Part shown: piece by piece, positions 8,985-57,517 of the stretch | Layout of the letters: every line of letters starts with the position of its first letter | Numbering within the stretch: the first letter of the stretch is position 1 | Assembly: GCF_006345805.1 (NCBI RefSeq) | Contig: NW_021833460.1 | Span: 10,804-74,803, forward strand | DNA length: 64,000 bases | DNA from: Octopus sinensis | Lineage: Eukaryota | Direction: 5' to 3' | The notes under the pieces: generated by a model | Seen by the model: the letters and a program-made list of their open reading frames with translations, nothing else | What the model was told of the DNA's origin: nothing | Databases searched by the model: none | Made by a program: the position numbers and the translations under genes

Positions 8985-9482
8985 CATGAGTATATAGATG
9001 TGTGTGTGTGTATATGTTTACATATGTATATATGTATGTATATATATATATGTCTATATATATATATAAGATTCATTCCTTAGCTTTTTTCTTCTTGTTT
9101 TTGTTTCCTCCTCCTGTTTTACATTCAGCAATTGTTTTGCTTCGTCATTTTAGCTGTTGTTTTTGTAGTTGTCGTCGAGGATGTTGTATTTTTCTTCTCC
9201 TTTTATTTCTATTTGTATTGTTTGCAAAGAAAATATATAAATCACACAATAAACTTGATAAAATATGTGACTAAACTGATTAACTACAGGTAATAAATCT
9301 GTAAACATCATTCAAGGAATTGGAAAAAGGGAGAAAAAATTCTTACATATGTATAAGTGTATGTGTCTGTGTATATACATATACTCACATACTCTATACA
9401 TACCATAACACATACCACACACACACACTACACAACACACACTATATATATATATATATATTATATATATGCAATATATATG

Positions 9483-9513
9483 ACACGTTAATGTATGTAT
9501 ATGTATATGCGTG

Positions 9514-9546
<33 letters not shown>

Positions 9547-9898
9547 TATATAAATACAAGCATACATATACGTATCATATATGAGTATATAAATATATAC
9601 ATATATATATGTATATTGATAGACATAATATATATCTGTATATAGAACATCCGTAATAACCGTGTAAACACAATACATGCATACATGCATGCATACATAT
9701 ATATATATATAATATATATATTATATATATATATATTATATATACACATATATATATATAGACAGATATGTATATGTATATATATACATGTACATATATA
9801 TACATGTATATATGTATATATATATACACATATATATACATGCATGTGTATATATATATGCATATATATGTACACGTTAAGTATGTATATGTATATGC

Positions 9899-9933
<35 letters not shown>

Positions 9934-10106
9934 TATATATATAAATACAAGATACATATACGTATCATATATGAGTATATAAATATATACATATATATAT
10001 GTATATTGATAGACATAAATATAATCTGTATATAGAACATCCGTAATAACCGTGTAAACACAATACATGCATACATGCATGCATACATTATAATATATAT
10101 AATATA

Positions 10107-10146
<40 letters not shown>

Positions 10147-10258
10147 TATATTAGACAATATGATATGTATATATATACATGTACATATATATACAGTATA
10201 TATGTATTATATATACACATATATATACATGCATGTTGTATATATATGCATATATATA
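9483..10258. repeat. Tandem duplication of a ~389-bp TA-rich unit
   Basis: acacgttaa starts at 9483 and 9872; the unique core tagaacatccgtaataaccgtgtaaacacaatac occurs in both units. Confidence 0.85.
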
Positions 10259-10425
10259 TAAATATCATGTATGCATACTTACAGATATACACGTATATAT
10301 ATATATATATGTTTATATGTATAAATATATATATTGTATGCATATATATAGAGAAAGATAAATATACATATAAATATATACATACACATATGCATATATA
10401 TATCTATATATTATAATATGTATAT

Positions 10426-21192: not shown

Positions 21193-21728
21193 TTGAGTGA
21201 GAGAGCAGTGCATGCCATCAAAGTGACACTGGGGTAAAATATACGAAGCCCAGTATACCCATCATGACTACCCGTCTGATAAGGGTACACTAGGCACATG
21301 CATCACAACCATATGTGCGCGACAAGGTGATCTCATATCAAGACAAACAGCACATGACCTTACAGGTGGGGCCCAGTTAGAATTTTCTTCTAAACGAGTA
21401 ACCTATCCCGCTCAAACGGTCCCTGAATAAGGGTTGTTTAAAGACGTTGAACAAACCACGCATGCTTCCAGAGGTGAATCATTCAAACCCCACAGAATCC
21501 CTCTCAACACATGGCTATCATGCTCCCCCAATACTTCTGTTCGTTATCAGAGATGCACATATCATCAGCCACTAAGGGATATGCTCGACGGAAAAGGTCA
21601 AGCAACTGACAAGCAAATCTGTGGCAGTACCAGGCAGTGGCTCTCAGGGCTTCTGATCTTAACTGATTGGCAGTGTTATCATGTATATTGTTTTGTCTTG
21701 GTATAAAAGATGGGATACAGCAAATATT
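21193..21728 (-). mobile_element. (TAA)n-associated non-coding retroposon, copy A (5'-inverted)
   Basis: Constant end ttgagtgagagagcagtg next to (ATT)n; 21624-21728 is inverted relative to copy C. Confidence 0.85.
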
Positions 21729-21738
21729 ATTATTATTA

Positions 21739-22275
21739 TTGAGTGAGAGAGCAGTGTATGCCATCAAAGTGACACTGGGGTAAAATATACGAAGCCCAAT
21801 ATACCCATCATGACTACCCGTCTGATAAGGGTACACCAGGCACATGCATCACAACCATATGTGCGCGACAAGGTGATCTCATATCAAGACAAACAGCACA
21901 TGACCTTACAGGTGGGGGCCCAGTTAGAATTTTCTTCTAAACGAGTAACCTATCCCGCTCAAACGGTCCCTGAATAAGGGTTGTTTAAAGACGTTGAACA
22001 AACCACGCATGCTTCCAGAGGTGAATTATTCAAACCCCACAGAATCCCTCTCAACACATGGCTATCATGCTCCCCCAATACTTCTGTTCGTTATCAGAGA
22101 TGCACATATCATCAGCCACTAAGGGATATGCTCGACGGAAAAGGTCAAGCAACTGACAAGCAAATCTGTGGCAGTACCAGGCAGTGGCTCTCAGGGCTTC
22201 TGATCTTAACTGATTGGCAGTGTTATCATGTATATTGTTTTGTCTTGGTATAAAAGATGGGATACAGCAAATATT
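21739..22275 (-). mobile_element. (TAA)n-associated retroposon, copy B (C/A recombinant, 5'-inverted)
   Basis: Offset about 547 bp from copy A and nearly identical to it; carries the same inversion at 22171-22275. Confidence 0.85.
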
Positions 22276-22285
22276 ATTATTATTA

Positions 22286-22843
22286 TTGAGTGAGAGAGCA
22301 GTGTATGCCATCAAAGTGACACTGGGGTAAAATATACGAAGCCCAATATACCCATCATGACTACCCGTCTGATAAGGGTACACCAGGCACATGCATCACA
22401 ACCATATGTGCGCGACATGGTGATCTCATATCAAGATAAACAGCACATGACCTTGCAGGTGGGGCCCAGTTAGAATTTTCTTCAGGTTGAGTAGCCCATC
22501 CCGCTCAAAAGGTCCCTGAATAAGGGTTGTTTAAGGATGTTGAAAGAACCACCCATGTTTCCAGAGGTGAATTATTAAAACCCCACAGAATACCTCTCAA
22601 CACATGGCTATGATGCTCCCCCACTACTTCTGCTCGTGATCAGAGATGCACATATCGTCAGCCACTAAGGGACATGCTCAACTGGTTAAGGTCAAACAAC
22701 TGACAAGCAAATCTGTGGTATTGAGCAGAATATTTGCTGTAGCCCATCTTTTATACCAAGACAAAACAATGTACATGATAACACTTCCAATCAGTTATGA
22801 TCAGAAGCCATGAGAGCCACTGCCTGGTACTGCATCAGGGCAT
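22286..22843 (-). mobile_element. (TAA)n-associated retroposon, copy C (full length, ~558 bp)
   Basis: Flanked by (ATT)n on both sides; minus-strand 5' end gccctgatgcagtacc, 3' end ctctctcactc(aat)n. Confidence 0.88.
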
Positions 22844-22868
22844 TTATTATTATTATTATATATTATTA

Positions 22869-22912
<44 letters not shown>

Positions 22913-22917
22913 TATTA

Positions 22918-25642
22918 TCATTCAGTAGTTTTATTTTTATAGCGTGCTTTTACTTCACTACCGAGCGCAGCTCTGTGTGCCTTGGGTATGTGATGTGATT
23001 TGTTGTGATGCTCTGATGGTTATTGTATGGAAAATGTTCTGCGTAGGATGTGTGCAGTGCCTAGTAGTGCAATTTTCTGTATGTTATATGTGTTGTAAGT
23101 CCTGATGTTTTTATGTATTTGTCTGAATATTTTTTATCATGCCTATGATAGGAATTTGTCTGTTTTCAGATTCCACATTCTAGTTACCTCTATTTCCAAG
23201 TCTTTGTATTTTGAGAGTTTCTCCATTTCTTTTAGAGACACGTTGTCATCTGTCGGTATTGATACATCAATTAGAAAGCATTTTTTTCTTGATGATCTCT
23301 GACAACTATATCTGGTCTTTTGGCCTTAATTTCTCTATCTGTGTGTATCGGCATATCCCAGAGTATGGTTGCTTTCTCGTTTTCTGTGACCTTTTCTGGT
23401 GTGTGCCTATACAATCTTTTTTCTGTTGTTATTCCATAATGTTGGCATAGCTTCCAATGTATGTAGGTTCCAACTCTGTCATGTCTGTGATATATTCCTT
23501 CTTAGCCAGGACTGGGCAGCTAGAGATAATATGATTTATTGTTTCTTGTCCATCTCCACATATTCTGCAGTTACTTGTAATATTTCTTTTCATTACATGC
23601 TTTTGGTAATTTCTGGTGGGGAGGCTTTGATCTTGTGCTGCAATTAAAAATCCCTCTGTTTCTGCTTTGAGTCCTGAGCTTCTCAACCATTGCTGGGATT
23701 TTTCTTTGTCTATTTCTTTTGCGTTTAGTTTAGTCCAGTATTTACCATGAAGGGGCTTTTCTTGCCATCGTTTTATCATGGTTCGTTGCTGTTCTATTTT
23801 TAGTTTGGATTTCATTTGTTTTATAGCTTTTGTTGTTTCTTCATCTTCTTTCTTCTTCTTCTTCTTCGTGTTTATTTGGTGGTATGATTTCTTGTTTGTA
23901 TTTGTCAGCTTCCTTAAATACTAGAACATTTTTTGTTTTGCTCGTGTTTTGCCGCTATCTGGATCAGTTTTCCTTCCTTTTGAAGTAGATATTTTTGCAG
24001 TCCTATGGTGGTTATTTTATAGTAGTTTTCCAGCTGTATAAGGCCTCTGCCACCTTCTATACGTTGTATATATAGTCTTTCTATGTCAGATTTTGTGTGA
24101 TGCATCCTAGATCCTGTCATTATTTTTCTTGTTTTCCTATCTATTTTGGTCAGTTCATTTCGTGTCCAATTAAGGATATTGTAGCTGTAACTTATAACTG
24201 GGACAGCTAAAGTGTTGATACCTATTATCTTGTTTTCAGCATTGAGCTCTGTTTTTAGTATTGATCTAACTCGTCTATAATATTCTTTTTTTATTTTCTC
24301 TTTCATTTGTGTGTTGTGTCTTATCTAGTTCATGGATTCCTAAGTATTTGTAAGTTTGGCTTTGGTCTAATTCTTTTATTTCATTGGTTTTATATAGTGT
24401 GATGTTGTTACTCTTAACTAGTTTTCCTCTTTTCATGGTTACTTTGGCGCATTTTTCTAATCCAAATATCATATCTATTTCTTTGGTAAATCCATGAACT
24501 GTCTTTAATAGTGTTTCCAGCTGTTTGTCATTTGCAGCGTATAGTTTTAGGTCATCCATATATAACAGGTGGCTGATCGTTTTGCCGTAACATTTATATC
24601 CGCATCCGGTTCTATTTAGTATATCAGATAGAGGTGACAGTGCCAGCAGAAAAGGAGTGGAGAGAGCGTATCTCCCTGGAATATTCCTCTTCTAATGGGG
24701 ATGTCTTTGGTTTTCATGAGTCCCTCTTTTGTTTGGAGGTATAGGACTGTTTGCCATTTATTCATAGAGTGCTCTATGAATTTTATGATTGTTGGTGCTA
24801 CTTTGTTAATGGCTAGTGTTTCGAGGATCCATGTGTGGGGGATGCTATCAAACGCCTTTTTGTAGTCAATCCAGGCCACACTGAGGCCTTTCTTCTTTCT
24901 GTGGCTGTCTTCAGTTACGGCTTAATTAATCATTAGTTGATCTTTACAGCCATATGAGCCTTTGCGGCATCCTTTCTGCTCTTCTGGGAACAGTTTGTTT
25001 TCGTCCAGGTGCTTGTTCAGCCTTTGCTATATCACTGCAGTAAATGCCTTGAACATAGTAGGGAGGCAGGTTATTGGTCTGTAGTTTTCTGGTTTTTCTG
25101 TTTCATTTGATTTGGGAATTAAGATGGTTTTCCCCTTCGTGAGCCATTCAGGCATTGTCTCTGGCTCTGCTAGTATGTTGTTAAAGTTTTCAGCCAGCTT
25201 TTTGTGCATTCCTGTTAGATATTTCAACCAGAAGTTGGGGATCTTGTCATGCCCAGGTGCCTTCCAGTTGCTTAGTCTTTGCAGTGCCTGGGTGACCTCT
25301 TCAGTTGTTATGGGTGTCTAAAGTTGTTCAGATGCCGAGTTTGTTATTTTGATACTCCTTTTTTTTGGTTCTTCGTTCGCCGACCATATTTCTCCCCAGA
25401 ATTCTTCCAATTCTTCTGCCGTTGGTGCTGCAGTGACTTCTATTTTATTTTTGCCCAGTTCTTGGTAGAACTTTTTGGGGTTGGAGTTGAACATTTTGTT
25501 TTGTTCAAAGAAGCGTTGGCGTTTCTCGTACCGGTGGATCCTTTGTGCTTTGGCAAGGATATCTTGCTTCAGCTTTTCTTTTATCTCAGGCAAATCTTTC
25601 TCTGTGATGTTATATTTGCGGAGTATTTTTGTTCTCTTTTTG

Positions 25643-25646
<4 letters not shown>
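22918..25646 (-). mobile_element. R4/Dong-clade non-LTR retrotransposon, 5'-truncated, frameshifted
   Basis: ENYRPITCLPT, AWIDYKKAFDS, RGIFQGDTLSPLLF, YMDDLK, GGRGL, CCHC CRICGDGQETINHIISSC, C-terminus IQKIALLGTAHILRRTFSIQ* (stop 23020-23022), ~100-nt 3'UTR; (ATT)n on both sides. Confidence 0.95.
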
Positions 25647-25805: not shown

Positions 25806-26807
25806 ATTCAGTATTATTATTTTTATAGCGTGCTTTCACTTCACTACCGAGCGCAGCTCTGTGTGCCTTGGGTATGTGCTGTGATTTGTTGTGATGCTCT
25901 GATGGTTATTGTATGGAAAGTGTTCTACGTAGGATGTGTGCAGTGCCTAGTAGTGCAATTTTCTGTATGTTATATGTGTTTGTAAGTCCTGGTGTTTTTG
26001 TTATGTATTTGTCTGAATATTTTTTATCATGCCTAATGCACCTACTATGATAGGAATTGTTTCTGTTTTCAGGTTCCACATTCTAGTTATCTCTATTTCC
26101 AAGTCTTTGTATTTTGAGAGCTTCTCCATATCTTTTAGAGACACGTTGTCATCAGCCGGTATTGATACATCAATTAGAAAGCATTTTTTTTCTTCATGAT
26201 CTCTGACAACTATATCTGGTCTGTTGGCCTTAATTTCTCTATCTGTGTGTATCGGCATATCCCAGAGTATGGTTGCTTTCTCGTTTTCTGTGACGTTTTC
26301 TGGTGTATGCCTATACCATCTTTTTTCTGTTGTTATTCCATAATGTTGGCATAGCTTCCAATGTATGTAGGTTCCAACTCTGTCATGTCTGTGAATATAT
26401 TCCTTCTTAGCCAGGACTGGGCAGCTAGAGATAATATGATTTATTGTTTCTTGTCCATCTCCACATATTCTGCAGTTACTTGTAATATTTCTTTTCATTA
26501 CATGTTTTTGGTAATTTCTGGTGGGGAGGCTTTGGTCTTGTGCTGCAATTAAAAATCCCTCTGTTTCTGCTTTGAGTCCTGAGCTTCTCAACCATTGCTG
26601 GGATTTTTCTTTGTCTATTTCTTTTGCGTTTAGTTTAGTGCAGTATTTACCATGAAGGGGCTTTTCTTGCCATCGTTTTATCATGGCTCGTTGCTGTTCT
26701 ATTTTTAGTTTGGATTTCATTTGTTTTATAGCTTTTGTTGTTTCTTCATCATCTTCTTCTTCTTCTTTGTGTTTATTAGGTGGTATGATTTCTTGTTTGT
26801 ATTTGTC
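25806..26807 (-). mobile_element. Second R4/Dong copy, 5'-truncated to the CCHC and RLE domains
   Basis: ORF 26001-26720 has CCHC and RLE motifs (ANRPDIVV...LIDVSIP...EKLSKYKDLEIE); same 3'UTR as the first copy. Confidence 0.95.
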
Positions 26808-26861
26808 TTTATTATTATTATTTGTCTTTATTATTTGTCTTTATTATTGTATTTGTCTTTA

Positions 26862-26911
<50 letters not shown>

Positions 26912-26981
26912 CATTACTATTATTATCATTATTATTATTTTATTATTATTATTATCATTATTATTATTATTATTATTATTA

Positions 26982-27020
<39 letters not shown>

Positions 27021-27138
27021 TATTATTATTATTATTTTATTATTATTATTATTATTATATTATCATTACTATTATTATTATTATTATTATTATTATATTA
27101 TTATTATTATTATTATATTATCATTATTATTAATACTA
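26808..27138. repeat. (ATT)n tract with atttgtcttt stutter units at its left edge
   Basis: Direct reading. Confidence 0.92.
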
Positions 27139-27650
27139 TTGAGGGAGAGAACACAGCATGCCATCAAAATGAACCTGGGGTACAAATATACGAAGCTTAA
27201 TTTACTTATCATGACTACCCGTCTGCACAAAAGGATGGTCTTATTTCAGGATAAAGAGCGCATGACCTTGCAGGTGGAGACCTGTTTGAAATTTCTTTCG
27301 GTGAAGGCCCCACTCAAAAGGTCCCTGAATAGGGGTTGTTTAAGGATGATGGATGAAACACCCATGTTTCCAGAGGTGAACTATTCAAACCCCAAAGAAT
27401 TCTTCTCAACACATTGCTATGATGCTCCCCCACTACTTATGCTCGTGATCAGAGATGCACATATCGTCAGCCACAAAGGGACATGCTCAGCTGGTTACGG
27501 ACAAACAAGTGACAAGCAAATCTGAGGTATTGGGCAGAATATCTGTGGTAGCCCATCTTTTATACCAAGACAAAGCAATGTACATGATAACACTTCCAAT
27601 CAGTTATGATCAGAAGCCATGAGATCCACAGCCTCGTACTTTCATCAGGG
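27139..27650 (-). mobile_element. (TAA)n-associated retroposon, copy D (diverged, small internal deletions)
   Basis: Homologous to copy C along its length; ends at the same catcaggg boundary. Confidence 0.85.
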
Positions 27651-38263: not shown

Positions 38264-38357
<94 letters not shown>

Positions 38358-38360
<3 letters not shown>

Positions 38361-38802
38361 AATGAGAGAGCAGTGCATGCCATCAAATTGACACTGGGGT
38401 ACAAATATACGAAGTCCAGTATACCCATCATGACTACCCATCTGATAAGGGTACACCAGGCACATGCATCACAACCATATGTGCGCGATATGGTGATCTC
38501 ATATCAAGATAAACAGCATATGACCTTGTAGATGGGGCCCAGTTAGAATTTTCTTCTGTTGAAAAGGTCCCCGAATAAGGGTTGTTTAACGATGTTGAAC
38601 GTTACACTCATATTTCCAGAGGTGAATTATTCAAACCTCAAAGAATTCCTCTCAACACATGGCTATGATGCTCCCCAAATACTTCTGCTTGTGATCAGAG
38701 ATGCACATATCGTCAGGCACTAAGGCACATGCTCAACTGGTTAAGGTCAAACAACTGACAAGCAAATCTGTGCTATTGAGCAGAATATTTGCTGTAGCCC
38801 AT
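38358..38802 (-). mobile_element. (TAA)n-associated retroposon, copy E (5'-truncated)
   Basis: Constant end ttgaatgagagagcagtg; stops at gctgtagcccat and runs into (ATT)n. Confidence 0.85.
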
Positions 38803-38832
38803 TATCATTATTATTATTATTATTATTATTAA

Positions 38833-38878
<46 letters not shown>

Positions 38879-38880
<2 letters not shown>

Positions 38881-38952
38881 AGTCACTGCCTGGAATCGAA
38901 CTCGGAATTTTGTGGTTAGCAGCCCGCGCTCTTAACCACTACGCAATATGCC
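38879..38952 (-). mobile_element. tRNA-like SINE head followed directly by (AAT)n
   Basis: ggcatattgcgtagtggttaagagcgcggg...gagttcgattccaggcagtgac has A/B boxes but no paired acceptor or anticodon stem. Confidence 0.7.
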
Positions 38953-39235
38953 AATGTAAATAATGTACATAATTCCTCGTTTCTTAAATACAGAACTGTA
39001 TGACAGTAAGAAGCATGAAATCATGACCATGATACGTGAATCAGAATTCCCGATACGGTATGCCATCAGCTCTTCCAGCCGATCCGCGTTATAGAATTTC
39101 AGCGTCATCATAAAATCGTAGAGTAATTTTGCATTCTACTAGATGCTATCTAAAATTAATATCTACAGGTCAACCCATGTTATCTGTTTTTAAAATCTCA
39201 CAGTTCTACAACCTCTGTATAGATTATTATTATTA

Positions 39236-46580: not shown

Positions 46581-47102
46581 TTATTATTATTATTATCATT
46601 TGTTGCCTTTGCACAGCTCCTAACACTAGAGATGTACTACGGTGTCAGCTGTTTACAACCAGTGAACTAAGATAACACAGTAGTAGTAGTACTTATTTTT
46701 CGAGCACCATCCGGACTATTCGAGCATTGCTGTTTTCTGCAAGTGCTCCACCCTTATTGCAGCCCCTATTTGTTCCATGCACATCTCAAGATATTTACCC
46801 ACTGTTCCTATGGCTCCGAAAATTATTGGTACTACTACCATATTTTTCAGCAACTACAAATGCTTAACCGCCCAAGCTAACCTGTCATATCTATCGACTT
46901 TTCTTTCTTCCTTATCGCACACCTTCTTTTCAGCTGGTCACGCTATATCTATGATCCAGCATCGCTTGCTTTCTTTCTAAATTAGCACTATGTTTGGTTT
47001 CCTATTCTCTATCTCATGGTCGCTCTGAATGATAAATTCCCATCTTTGCATTATGGTTTTGGATGATGCATTCGGGTTATGTTCGTACCACAATTATTAT
47101 TA

Positions 47103-47517
47103 TTGAATGAAAGAGCAGTGAATACCATCAAAGTGACACTGGGGTAAAATATACGAAGCCCAGTATACCCATCATGACTACCCGTCTGATAAGGGTACGC
47201 CAGGCACATGCATCACAACCATATGTACGCGACTTATTAAGATTAACAGTGCATGACCTTGCAGGTGGGGCCCAGTTAGAATTTTCTTCAGGTCGAGTAG
47301 CCCATCTCGCTCAAAATGTCCCTGGATAAGGATGTTGAACAAAACACTCATGTTTCCAAAGGTGAATTAGCCAAACTCCAAAGAATGCCTCTTAACACAT
47401 GGCTATGATGCTCCCACACTACTTCTGCTTGTGATCAGAGATGCACATATCGTCAGCCACTAAGGGACATGCTCAGCTGGTTATGGTCAAGCAAGTGACA
47501 AGTAAATCTGTGGTATT
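47103..47517 (-). mobile_element. (TAA)n-associated retroposon, copy F (5'-truncated)
   Basis: Constant end ttgaatgaaagagcagtg; truncated at aaatctgtggtatt; (ATT)n on both sides. Confidence 0.85.
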
Positions 47518-47551: not shown

Positions 47552-47755
47552 TGACAGAATCGTTAGCACGCCGCGGGAGTGCTTAGCGGTATTTCGTTCG
47601 TCATAAAGACGCTCTGAGTTCAAATTCCGCCGAAGTCGATTTTGCCTTTTAGCCTATGAGTCGATAAATTAAGTACCAGTGAAACACTGGGGTCGATGTT
47701 ATTGAATTCTCCCCTCCCCAAAGTTTCAATCCTTGTGCCTTTACTAGAAAGGACT
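47552..47755 (+). mobile_element. SINE family C with (CTA)n tail
   Basis: cagaatcgttagcacgcc...gagttcaaattccgccgaagtcga...cactggggtcgatg. Confidence 0.8.
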
Positions 47756-57261: not shown

Positions 57262-57448
57262 GAAATTTTGCGGGGGGGTTTTAGTCGTTTACATTGACAT
57301 CAGTGTTTCACCGGCACTTACTTTATCGACCCCGACATGATGAAAAGCAAAGTCGACCACAGCATAATTTGAACAGAGAACGTAAATACGGACGAAATGC
57401 CGCTAAGTATTTTACCCGGTGCGCTAACGATTCTACCAGATCGCCGCC
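57262..57448 (-). mobile_element. SINE family C
   Basis: tttatcgaccccgac...aaagcaaagtcgacc...gaaatgccgctaagtattt...gcgctaacgattct. Confidence 0.75.
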
Positions 57449-57454
57449 TTGATG

Positions 57455-57459
57455 ATAAT

Positions 57460-57517
<58 letters not shown>

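What the first reader, a model, noticed from the sequence alone, without database searches (positions are those of the whole stretch)
22286..22843. A ~558-bp non-coding, tRNA-headless retroposon restricted to (TAA)n tracts (six copies)
Seen: copies at 21193, 21739, 22286, 27139, 38358 and 47103 are all on the minus strand with an invariant 3' end (ctctctcactc-aataat). The 5' ends vary: two share the boundary gccctgatg, two are truncated and two are inverted. All but D have (AAT)n on the 5' side too. I found no A/B boxes, no ORF and no clear homology to the neighbouring Dong 3'UTR. Inference: a SINE-like passenger mobilised by a TAA-specific RLE protein. Its defined 5' end must arise by an unknown route (Pol II start, processing or an unrecognised ribozyme), and it is apparently recognised without sharing this Dong's tail. 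I cannot tell whether repeat libraries already hold it.
Basis: partly seen in the sequence, partly recalled or inferred. Interest (0 to 1): 0.78.

Follow-up and report, generated by a model that had tools for sequence, protein, structure and literature searches.

The report
Headless (TAA)n-tailed octopus retroposon family
This is a real but fairly ordinary family of about 558-bp non-coding "passenger" retroposons in an octopus genome; each copy ends in a (TAA)n tail and sits in TAA-repeat arrays beside Dong-like LINEs that probably copy it.

Summary
Six copies lie at the stated coordinates, all on the minus strand. All share one 3' end, ...CTCTCTCACTCAA(TAA)n. None has an ORF, a tRNA/5S/7SL/snRNA head or a known ribozyme, and none resembles the adjacent LINE.

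Seven further loci from public read assemblies, plus translated copies in Octopus bimaculoides gene models, show the same 3' end. At least five independent copies share the discrete 5' start ATGCCCTGATGCAG. It is therefore a defined unit, not a LINE 3'UTR.

Three features point to target-primed reverse transcription:
- 5' truncations.
- AT microhomology at 5' junctions.
- One 5' inversion with the anatomy of L1 "twin priming".

The tandem triplet A-B-C is two insertions plus one unequal crossover, so the "two inverted" copies are one event. The neighbouring LINEs carry RT, a zinc knuckle and an R2-like restriction-type endonuclease, and have (TAA)n tails. Mobilisation by them is inferred, not shown.

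TAA flanking holds for 4 of 5 independent window insertions but only about 3 of 7 older outside copies. How the 5' end is defined remains unknown; T4 runs argue against Pol III.

Verdict: a new, probably catalogued but uncharacterised, member of the non-autonomous non-LTR retroposons. Interest is moderate.

The parts
22286..22843 (-). Copy C. Full-length element of 558 nt, sense strand = minus. It starts ATGCCCTGATGCAG at 22843 and ends CTCTCTCACTCAA at 22286.
22707..22843 (-). 5' unit of copy C (element nt 1-137, ATGCCC...CCACAGATTTGC). This unit is tandemly repeated in some O. bimaculoides copies and partly duplicated in L012. It contains an 11-bp hairpin (CUUCUGAUCA/UGAUUGGAAG) and TATAAAAG at 22748-22755.
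21739..22285 (-). Copy B. It is a recombinant: A-like, including the inverted 5' segment (22171-22275), up to alignment column 454, and C-like from column 488 to the 3' end and tail.
21193..21738 (-). Copy A. Element nt 126-558 are in normal orientation. Nt 11-115 are inverted (21624-21728). Nt 1-10 and 116-125 are missing. The flank junction shows AATA(T) microhomology with (AAT)n. This is a twin-priming-like insertion.
22844..22922 (-). (TAA)n tract. It is the tail of LINE1 and the 5' flank of copy C.
22923..25645 (-). LINE1. A 5'-truncated, frame-broken Dong-like LINE with RT (RVT_1), a zinc knuckle and an RLE-like C-terminus. Its roughly 190-nt 3'UTR ends ...CTACTGAATG(ATAA)n.
25809..26807 (-). 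LINE2. A roughly 1-kb 5'-truncated copy of the same LINE (95% identical). It keeps a 239-aa open C-terminal ORF (26001-26720) whose zinc knuckle and RLE match R2 proteins.
26808..27138 (-). Long degenerate (TAA)n tract. It is the tail of copy D and the 5' flank of LINE2.
27139..27650 (-). Copy D. Old (about 81-86% identity), full length apart from the first 3 nt and internal deletions. Its 5' flank is A6 plus (GAA)n, not TAA.
38358..38802 (-). Copy E. 5'-truncated at about nt 98 with AT microhomology. Its tail is (CAA)10 then (TAA)23 (38264-38357). (AAT)24 lies on the 5' side (38803-38878).
47103..47517 (-). Copy F. 5'-truncated at about nt 122 with AATA microhomology. It has a 12-nt tail (47093-47104) and (AAT)13 on the 5' side (to 47552).

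Best explanation
The copies belong to a family of about 558-nt non-coding, non-autonomous non-LTR retroposons of octopus. The family is SINE-like in behaviour but has no Pol III-type head.

Proposed mechanism, with shown and inferred steps marked:
1. An RNA running from ATGCCCUGAUG... to ...CUCUCUCACUCAA(UAA)n is reverse-transcribed at a nick in a (TAA)n tract by target-primed reverse transcription. (Inferred.)
2. The enzyme is borrowed from a (TAA)n-tailed LINE with a restriction-like endonuclease, such as the Dong-like elements in the same array. (Inferred.)
3. Priming probably works by pairing the nicked (TTA)n strand with the RNA's (UAA)n tail. The element shares no other sequence with the LINE in this window. 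(Inferred.)
4. Incomplete cDNA synthesis gives 5' truncations, joined through A/T microhomology with the upstream (TAA)n. (The truncations and microhomologies are shown.)
5. In one event the upstream (AAT)n end annealed to the internal AAUAUU site and made a second cDNA. This produced the 5' inversion of copy A. (The anatomy is shown; the mechanism is inferred.)
6. Because each new copy brings its own (TAA)n tail, elements pile up head-to-tail: D-LINE2-LINE1-C-B-A. (The array is shown.)
7. An unequal crossover between C and A created B. (Supported by two informative sites.)

The fixed 5' end most likely reflects a transcription start set by an internal, non-Pol III promoter in the 137-nt 5' unit. 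This last step is the least supported.
For: **Copies and ends.** Six window copies share one 3' end plus a (TAA)n tail. Seven independent outside loci (L009, L012, L013, L016, L019, L020, L024; nhmmer E 1e-58 to 1e-89) end at the same ...CTCTCA(C/A)T(C/T)AA wherever the 3' region is present.

**5' start.** The same start, ATGCCCTGATGCAG, occurs in C, D (minus 3 nt), L009, L012 and the O. bimaculoides copy behind P0127. It is probably also the start in L020. The upstream flanks are unrelated.

**Polarity.** Truncation is always at the same end: E, F and L024.

**Microhomology.** The 5' junctions share AT, AATA or AATAT with (AAT)n.

**Inversion.** Copy A has nt 11-115 inverted with a 10-nt gap. 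This matches the described products of twin priming in L1 (PMC2837659, PMC2912911).

**Non-coding, no head.** There is no ORF. No tRNA or Rfam family is found. There are no terminal inverted repeats.

**Strand.** Sense-strand RNA folds better than antisense in 8 of 8 copies; for copy C, z = -2.6 against +0.6.

**Neighbouring LINEs.** They have RVT_1 and zf-RVT domains, and a C-terminus aligning to the zinc knuckle and RLE of R2 proteins (9nl2_A, E 8e-5). They have (TAA)n tails in the same orientation.

**Literature.** Dong elements, including one from a snail, target TAA microsatellites (PMC3812793). Dong-R4 is the most abundant recently active LINE group in O. vulgaris (PMC13282606).

**Origin of B.** B equals A at 30 sites up to column 454 and equals C at all 3 sites from column 488 on.
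Against: - Nothing shows directly that the LINE in this window, or any Dong-like LINE, copies the element. The two share only the tail and a weak ACT[G/C]AAT motif next to it.
- Among outside copies, L013, L016, L019 and L020 have no TAA on the 5' side, and L019 and L020 have no tail. Strict TAA targeting is therefore not established. Decay of old microsatellites could explain this but is assumed, not shown.
- No target-site duplication or empty site could be examined.
- No promoter was demonstrated. The conserved TATAAAAG at nt 89-96 would place a start near nt 120, not nt 1.
- Structure z-scores are modest and inconsistent in old copies.
- Twin priming has been described for APE-type L1, not for RLE-type LINEs.
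Confidence: 0.8

Rival explanations
1. It is a classical stringent SINE/LINE pair. The element's last 50-150 nt would derive from the 3'UTR of a different TAA-tailed LINE family, not present in this window, whose protein recognises that sequence. The neighbouring LINE would only be a co-tenant of the TAA array.
For: O. vulgaris has five recently active Dong-R4 families plus Hero families (PMC13282606). Only one LINE family is present in the window. The element's 3' terminus is strictly conserved even in copies that are about 30% diverged, as expected for a recognition site.
Against: No such LINE was seen. None of 13 independent copies continues upstream into coding sequence. The comparison could be made with only one LINE family.
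Confidence: 0.25
2. The 558 nt are only the 3' part of a longer, unrecognised LINE or other coding retroelement, and the copies are 5'-truncated remnants.
For: E, F, L024 and A show 5' truncation or rearrangement. The element is long for a SINE.
Against: Five to six independent copies begin at the same nucleotide with unrelated upstream flanks: (TAA)n, A6+(GAA)n, or unique sequence. No ORF or RT similarity lies upstream of any of them.
Confidence: 0.04
3. The defined 5' end is made by RNA processing of array co-transcripts, either by a self-cleaving ribozyme at the element's 5' end (as in R2 and its SIDEs) or by cleavage next to an upstream tRNA-like structure, rather than by a transcription start.
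For: The elements sit head-to-tail in arrays that could be co-transcribed. R2 and its non-autonomous SIDEs use a 5' HDV-like ribozyme (PMC3774820). A tRNA-like piece lies directly 5' of copy E and shares CCAGGCAGTGRCT with the element's nt 16-28.
Against: No ribozyme family is found even at E<=10. There is no convincing P1 pairing for nt 1-7, and the only long-range helix (GCCC/GGGC) is not kept in L009. Copies with tandem 5' units would not survive efficient cleavage at each unit. The 13-nt match to the tRNA-like piece is at chance level (E 3.7), and neither ARAGORN nor Rfam calls that piece a tRNA.
Confidence: 0.08
4. It is a DNA-level repeat, such as a satellite with a 546-bp period or a MITE/Helitron-type transposon, and not a retroposon.
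For: A, B and C form a tandem array with a period of about 546 bp.
Against: Dispersed copies carry their own tails and are truncated at one end only. There are no terminal inverted repeats. The tandem triplet is explained by one crossover.
Confidence: 0.02

Closest known systems
SINEs (tRNA-, 5S-, 7SL- or snRNA-headed non-autonomous retroposons mobilised by partner LINEs)
   Same: It is short, non-coding and dispersed. It has a fixed 3' end with a simple-repeat tail and shows 5' truncations. It depends on a LINE enzyme and co-occurs with a LINE carrying the same tail repeat.
   Different: There is no Pol III head. T4 runs in the sense strand at nt 78, 264, 334 and 512 (copy C) would stop Pol III; in the alignment the run near nt 334 is kept (TTTT) in five of the seven outside copies. 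No 3' block is shared with the LINE in the window. At 558 nt it is at the long end of the SINE range.
R2 SIDEs (short internally deleted elements of R2; PMC3774820)
   Same: Both are non-autonomous passengers of a site-specific RLE-type LINE, living in the same repetitive target.
   Different: SIDEs keep the R2 5' ribozyme and sequence identical to the R2 3'UTR. This element has no similarity to the neighbouring LINE's 3'UTR or body and no detectable ribozyme.
Alu/SVA and processed pseudogenes with L1 (tail-based 'relaxed' trans-mobilisation; from general knowledge and PMC3747384)
   Same: The passenger shares only the simple tail with the LINE. [quoted passage not shown] Like SVA, it probably needs a non-Pol III promoter and has a repeat-number-variable 5' part.
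   Different: The tail is (TAA)n, not poly(A). The presumed enzyme is an RLE-type, microsatellite-targeting LINE rather than APE-type L1. Tail-only recognition by such an enzyme has not been demonstrated.
Dong / R4-clade (and some HERO) LINEs that insert into (TAA)n microsatellites (PMC3812793, PMC4640811)
   Same: The neighbouring LINE1 and LINE2 have RT, a zinc knuckle and an RLE, with (TAA)n tails, and they form TAA arrays. The element uses the same tail, orientation and sites.
   Different: The element itself encodes nothing. The clade of the neighbouring LINE (R4/Dong or HERO) was not determined phylogenetically.
Mouse L1 5' monomers (tandem promoter units; from general knowledge)
   Same: The 5' unit of about 137 nt is tandemly repeated in some copies (P0121, P0123) and partly duplicated in L012.
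   Different: Promoter activity is untested. The duplications could instead be template jumps by an R2-like RT, since the junctions carry 4-7 extra nucleotides (TAAT, TAACTAT).

Membership tests
Canonical SINE | A 5' head derived from a Pol III-transcribed RNA (tRNA, 5S, 7SL, snRNA) with an internal promoter | tested here: not met
   ARAGORN finds no tRNA in the window or in 9 outside loci. Rfam finds nothing at gathering score or at E<=10 on copy C.
Canonical SINE | The transcript can be made by Pol III, meaning no internal T4 terminators | tested here: not met
   Copy C has T4 runs in the sense strand at nt 78, 264, 334 and 512. The run near nt 334 is present in five of the seven outside copies.
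Canonical SINE | Short, non-coding, dispersed, with polar (5') truncation and a simple-repeat 3' tail | tested here: met
Canonical SINE | A 3' region shared with the partner LINE (stringent type) | tested here: inconclusive
   No similarity to the only LINE family in the window exceeds shuffled controls. Other octopus LINE families could not be searched.
SIDE-like deletion derivative of the neighbouring LINE | The 3' end is identical to the LINE 3'UTR | tested here: not met
   Local alignment score 16, against a shuffle mean of 15.5.
SIDE-like deletion derivative of the neighbouring LINE | The 5' end (ribozyme/5'UTR) is shared with the LINE | not testable with these tools
   Both LINE copies in the window are 5'-truncated, and no full-length copy could be fetched.
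Dong/R4-type TAA-specific RLE LINE (the neighbour, as proposed driver) | RT followed by a CCHC zinc knuckle and a PD-(D/E)xK restriction-like endonuclease | tested here: met
   Pfam RVT_1 and zf-RVT. The C-terminus aligns to R2 protein residues 879-1108, including KPD...DV...K. The motifs are visible in the translation.
Dong/R4-type TAA-specific RLE LINE (the neighbour, as proposed driver) | (TAA)n at the 3' junction, with insertion in TAA tracts | tested here: met
   LINE1, LINE2, L007 and L008 all end in (TAA)n.
Dong/R4-type TAA-specific RLE LINE (the neighbour, as proposed driver) | Placement of the RT in the R4 clade by phylogeny | not tested
   No reference sequences were available. HERO is an alternative RLE clade with microsatellite-specific members (PMC4640811).
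Ribozyme-processed retroelement (HDV-like 5' ribozyme; hammerhead retrozyme) | A recognisable self-cleaving ribozyme fold at the 5' end or within the unit | tested here: inconclusive
   No ribozyme family is found at E<=10 and no conserved P1-type pairing was seen. HDV-like folds are hard to detect by sequence, so absence is not proven.
DNA transposon / MITE | Terminal inverted repeats | tested here: not met
   Only two internal imperfect inverted repeats are found, none at the termini.
Twin-priming product (for copy A/B) | The 5' segment is inverted and adjoins the 3' segment in RNA coordinates with a small gap or overlap. The flank-proximal end of the inverted part is the internal position, with primer microhomology. 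| tested here: met
   Nt 11-115 are inverted and nt 126-558 are direct, leaving a 10-nt gap. The flank junction (AAT)n|ATTTGCTG shares AATA(T) with the RNA site AAUAUU. Target-site duplication is not assessable inside a microsatellite.

The most novel reading that the evidence does not exclude
A (TAA)n-targeting, restriction-like-endonuclease LINE (Dong/R4-type) might mobilise unrelated RNAs in trans solely through their (UAA)n tails. This would be an RLE-LINE counterpart of the L1/Alu/SVA 'relaxed' system. On this reading the 558-nt element is its dedicated passenger, transcribed by a non-Pol III route from a monomer-like 5' unit. The same enzyme would produce twin-priming-type inversions, previously tied to APE-type L1.
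Probability: 0.2. Interest if true: 0.6.

Novelty: new member of a known kind. Interest (0 to 1): 0.35.

Why it matters
RLE-type, site-specific LINEs such as R2 are thought to recognise their own 3'UTR strictly. R2 is now being engineered for targeted gene insertion. A natural passenger that shares only a microsatellite tail with a Dong-like LINE would suggest that some RLE LINEs choose templates largely by tail pairing. That idea is testable with a marked-element assay.

For octopus genomics, the family helps explain how TAA microsatellites grow into multi-kilobase arrays of retroposons. It also accounts for a set of spurious 'uncharacterised proteins' in O. bimaculoides annotations. Beyond that, it is one more repeat family in a repeat-rich genome.

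Tried and rejected
- **Exact-motif scan of metagenome contigs.** The invariant 18-mer GATATGTGCATCTCTGAT gave six loci, all chance matches with no extended similarity.
- **Contigs for O. bimaculoides UniRef models.** The look-up of encoding contigs had no record for P0122 or P0123.
- **Profile search with the translated 5' unit.** Only one extra hit.
- **Repetitive proteins P0131, P0133 and P0138.** These hits of the representative search were judged spurious, being unrelated tandem-repeat proteins.
- **tRNA-head hypothesis.** A tRNA-like piece 5' of copy E, and a visually tRNA-like stretch 5' of L016, suggested a lost head. ARAGORN and Rfam do not call either a tRNA, and the shared 10-13-mer is at chance level. 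It is kept only as a lead.
- **Inverted-repeat-mediated DNA inversion for copy A.** Rejected because both flanking short repeats and 10+10 nt are missing.
- **Conservation profiling across diverged copies.** It gave a roughly flat profile of about 70% with a peak at nt 181-200. It was confounded by truncated copies and was not used.
- **Dinucleotide-shuffle script.** The first version timed out and was replaced by mononucleotide shuffles.
- **Run accessions.** SRR11869384-94 and SRR7158634 are not mentioned in the paper library, so the organism behind the outside contigs is unknown.
- **Other ORFs.** Pfam on ten other window ORFs found nothing relevant.

Full report
**1. The observation**

The window is AT-rich, microsatellite-dense eukaryotic DNA. 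blastn of 22286-22843 against the window finds six copies at exactly the stated starts, all in one orientation.

| Copy | Coordinates | State |
|---|---|---|
| A | 21193-21738 | 5' end inverted |
| B | 21739-22285 | 5' end inverted |
| C | 22286-22843 | full length |
| D | 27139-27650 | full length, about 81% identical |
| E | 38358-38802 | truncated |
| F | 47103-47517 | truncated |

A profile built from the six copies finds no further copies. Read on the minus strand, all six end ...CTCTCTCACTCAA followed by (TAA)n.

All frames carry stops, at positions that differ between copies. ARAGORN finds no tRNA. Rfam finds nothing at gathering score over the window, and nothing meaningful at E<=10 on copy C. 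This covers tRNA, 5S, 7SL, snRNA and all curated self-cleaving ribozymes.

**2. Which strand, and is it a retroposon?**

Several points agree that the minus strand is the sense strand.
- The invariant end carries the tail, and all length variation is at the other end.
- The neighbouring LINEs have the same orientation and the same tail.
- Minus-strand RNA of copy C folds to -183 kcal/mol (z = -2.6), against -139 kcal/mol (z = +0.6) for the plus strand.
- Sense folds better than antisense in 8 of 8 copies tested, although the z-scores are modest.

There are no terminal inverted repeats.

The 5' junctions of the truncated copies fall at A/T microhomologies with the upstream (AAT)n: E shares AT and F shares AATA. 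This is what microhomology-mediated 5' joining of LINE cDNAs produces (PMC4245944).

**3. The inverted copies**

In A and B, element nt 126-558 are direct and nt 11-115 are inverted. Nt 116-125 and nt 1-10 are missing. The inverted piece meets the upstream (AAT)n at ...AATAAT|ATTTGCTG. That position is where a 3' end of (AAT)n can pair with the RNA's AAUAUU at nt 110-115.

This is the anatomy of twin priming described for L1: a 5'-inverted insert with a small deletion at the inversion point (PMC2837659, PMC2912911). An inversion by recombination between short inverted repeats is excluded, because both boundary sequences are absent.

A and B are 99.1% identical and share both junctions. B matches A at 30 variable sites up to alignment column 454, and matches C at all three sites from column 488 to the end. 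At two of those three sites, B and C share the derived state. B's tail also has the length of C's tail.

The tandem triplet is therefore two insertions (C and A) plus one unequal crossover between them. The window holds five independent insertion events, not six.

**4. Surroundings**

On the minus strand the order is D, (TAA)n, LINE2 (25809-26807), (TAA)n, LINE1 (22923-25645), (TAA)n, C, B, A.

LINE1 and LINE2 are 95% identical, and both are 5'-truncated. LINE1's coding region is broken into at least six pieces. LINE2 keeps a 239-aa C-terminal ORF.

Pfam finds RVT_1 and zf-RVT. The C-terminal ORF aligns to the zinc knuckle and restriction-like endonuclease of solved R2 proteins (9nl2_A E 8e-5; 9nl3_A; 9dou_A), including the KPD...D...K motif. 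Homologues are widespread in marine invertebrates.

Two close relatives fetched from public assemblies (L007, L008) also end in (TAA)n.

Dong elements, including one from a snail, are the known TAA-microsatellite-specific LINEs (PMC3812793). R4 and some HERO lineages are the microsatellite-specific RLE clades (PMC4640811). Dong-R4 is the most abundant recently active LINE group in O. vulgaris (PMC13282606). I did not place the LINE phylogenetically, so I call it 'Dong-like'.

The element shows no similarity to this LINE above shuffled controls, either in the last 200 nt or anywhere else. The only shared features are the tail and a weak ACT[G/C]AAT motif next to it.

**5. Related sequences elsewhere**

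A DNA motif scan of metagenome contigs found nothing real.

Translating the element and searching protein collections worked. Thirteen or more O. bimaculoides 'uncharacterised proteins' are translations of element copies, mostly antisense. The family therefore exists in Octopus bimaculoides and contaminates its gene models.

Seven further independent loci came from read assemblies of runs SRR11869384-94, whose organism is unknown. nhmmer E-values are 1e-58 to 1e-89. These copies are about 65-75% identical to the window consensus.

They end at the same 3' nucleotides wherever that region is present. L009, L013 and L024 have degenerate TAA tails. L019 and L020 have none left.

**6. The 5' end**

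The start ATGCCCTGATGCAG recurs in these copies:
- C, preceded by (TAA)n.
- D, minus 3 nt and preceded by A6 plus (GAA)n.
- L009, preceded by (ATA)n.
- The copy behind P0127, preceded by (AAT)n.
- L012.
- Probably L020.
- L019, which begins about 4 nt further in.

That gives five to six of 13 independent copies starting at one nucleotide with unrelated flanks. The element is a discrete unit and not a LINE 3'UTR fragment.

Some copies carry extra 5' material. P0121 and P0123 read from ...GCATCAGGGC through AT(T/A)A into GCAAATCTGTGGTATTGA. This means the roughly 137-nt 5' unit is repeated in tandem. L012 has an additional nt 1-62 segment joined by TAACTAT.

These could be promoter-type monomers, as in mouse L1, or template jumps by an R2-like RT with a few added nucleotides. 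I cannot decide between the two.

T4 runs in the sense strand argue against Pol III; the run near nt 334 is also present in five of the seven outside copies. A TATAAAAG at nt 89-96 is kept in C, D, L009 and L012. It would place a start near nt 120 rather than nt 1, so it is only a lead. No ribozyme fold was found, and the one long-range helix of the 5' domain is not conserved.

**7. TAA restriction**

Within the window, four of five independent insertions have (TAA)n on the 5' side as well as their own tail. TAA tracts make up under 3% of the window. Most of these upstream tracts are the tails of earlier TAA-tailed elements.

Among the outside copies, only L009, L012 and (in degenerate form) L024 keep TAA-like 5' flanks. 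L013, L016, L019 and L020 do not. Microsatellite decay in old copies is a reasonable explanation, but it was not tested. TAA preference is supported; strict restriction is not shown.

**8. Comparison and verdict**

The element behaves like a SINE but fails the defining SINE test of a Pol III head. It also fails the SIDE test of homology to its LINE. In behaviour it is closest to tail-dependent passengers of L1 (Alu, SVA), transposed to a (TAA)n-tailed RLE LINE.

Large de novo libraries for octopus list hundreds of 'unclassified SINE' and 'unknown' families (PMC13282606). The sequence is probably catalogued there, but I found no description of it or of any Dong-dependent passenger in the searchable literature.

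I rate it a new member of the known class of non-autonomous non-LTR retroposons, of moderate interest. The more novel possibility is tail-only template choice by an RLE LINE, with twin-priming products. I give that about a 20% chance.

Noticed in passing
window 38879-38955 (minus strand): A roughly 75-nt tRNA-like piece with A-box-like GCGTAGTGGTTAAG and B-box-like GAGTTCGATTCC. It ends ...CCAGGCAGTGACTTG directly followed by (AAT)24, immediately 5' of copy E. It may be a second kind of short RNA copied with a TAA tail. ARAGORN and Rfam do not call it a tRNA. It shares CCAGGCAGTGRCT with element nt 16-28, but at chance level.
   Followed up: partly
window 47553-47720 (plus strand) and about 57380-57461: Fragments of the abundant octopus tRNA-derived SINE (GACAGAATCGTTAGCACGCC...GAGTTCAAATTCCGCCGAAGTC). 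Their 5' ends abut (ATT)n/(TAA)n tracts, so TAA tracts border the heads of a different SINE family as well.
   Followed up: no
window 38264-38360: The tail of copy E is (CAA)10 next to the element and then (TAA)23. This is a tail whose repeat unit changed, by mutation and slippage or by a variant template.
   Followed up: no
O. bimaculoides UniRef entries (P0121-P0129, P0132, P0134, P0144-P0147): At least 13 annotated 'uncharacterised proteins' of O. bimaculoides are translations of this non-coding repeat, mostly of its antisense strand. Some are fused to other sequence. They are probable annotation artefacts or exonised repeats.
   Followed up: partly
window 22923-25645 versus 25809-26807: LINE1 is broken into at least six ORF pieces by frameshifts and stops. 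The shorter LINE2 still has an intact 239-aa zinc-knuckle/endonuclease ORF. Both are dead 5'-truncated copies, so neither can be the active driver.
   Followed up: partly
L012 970-1105 (shown in element sense): This outside copy has a partial duplicate of element nt 1-62 joined to the full 5' end by TAACTAT, with (AAT)n further upstream. It also lacks the last roughly 100 nt of the element.
   Followed up: partly
window 9462-10334: An AT-rich tandem repeat with a 390-bp period (2.2 copies, 91% match) embedded in a 1-kb (TA)n region.
   Followed up: no
LINE 3'UTRs: window 22960-23010, 25850-25900; L007; L008: A hairpin (CACWKCAC...GUGMAGUG) about 40-85 nt upstream of the (TAA)n tail appears to be maintained between the window LINEs and the 80%-identical L008, with changes on both sides. 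It is a candidate recognition structure of the LINE, and the 558-nt element has no evident counterpart.
   Followed up: no
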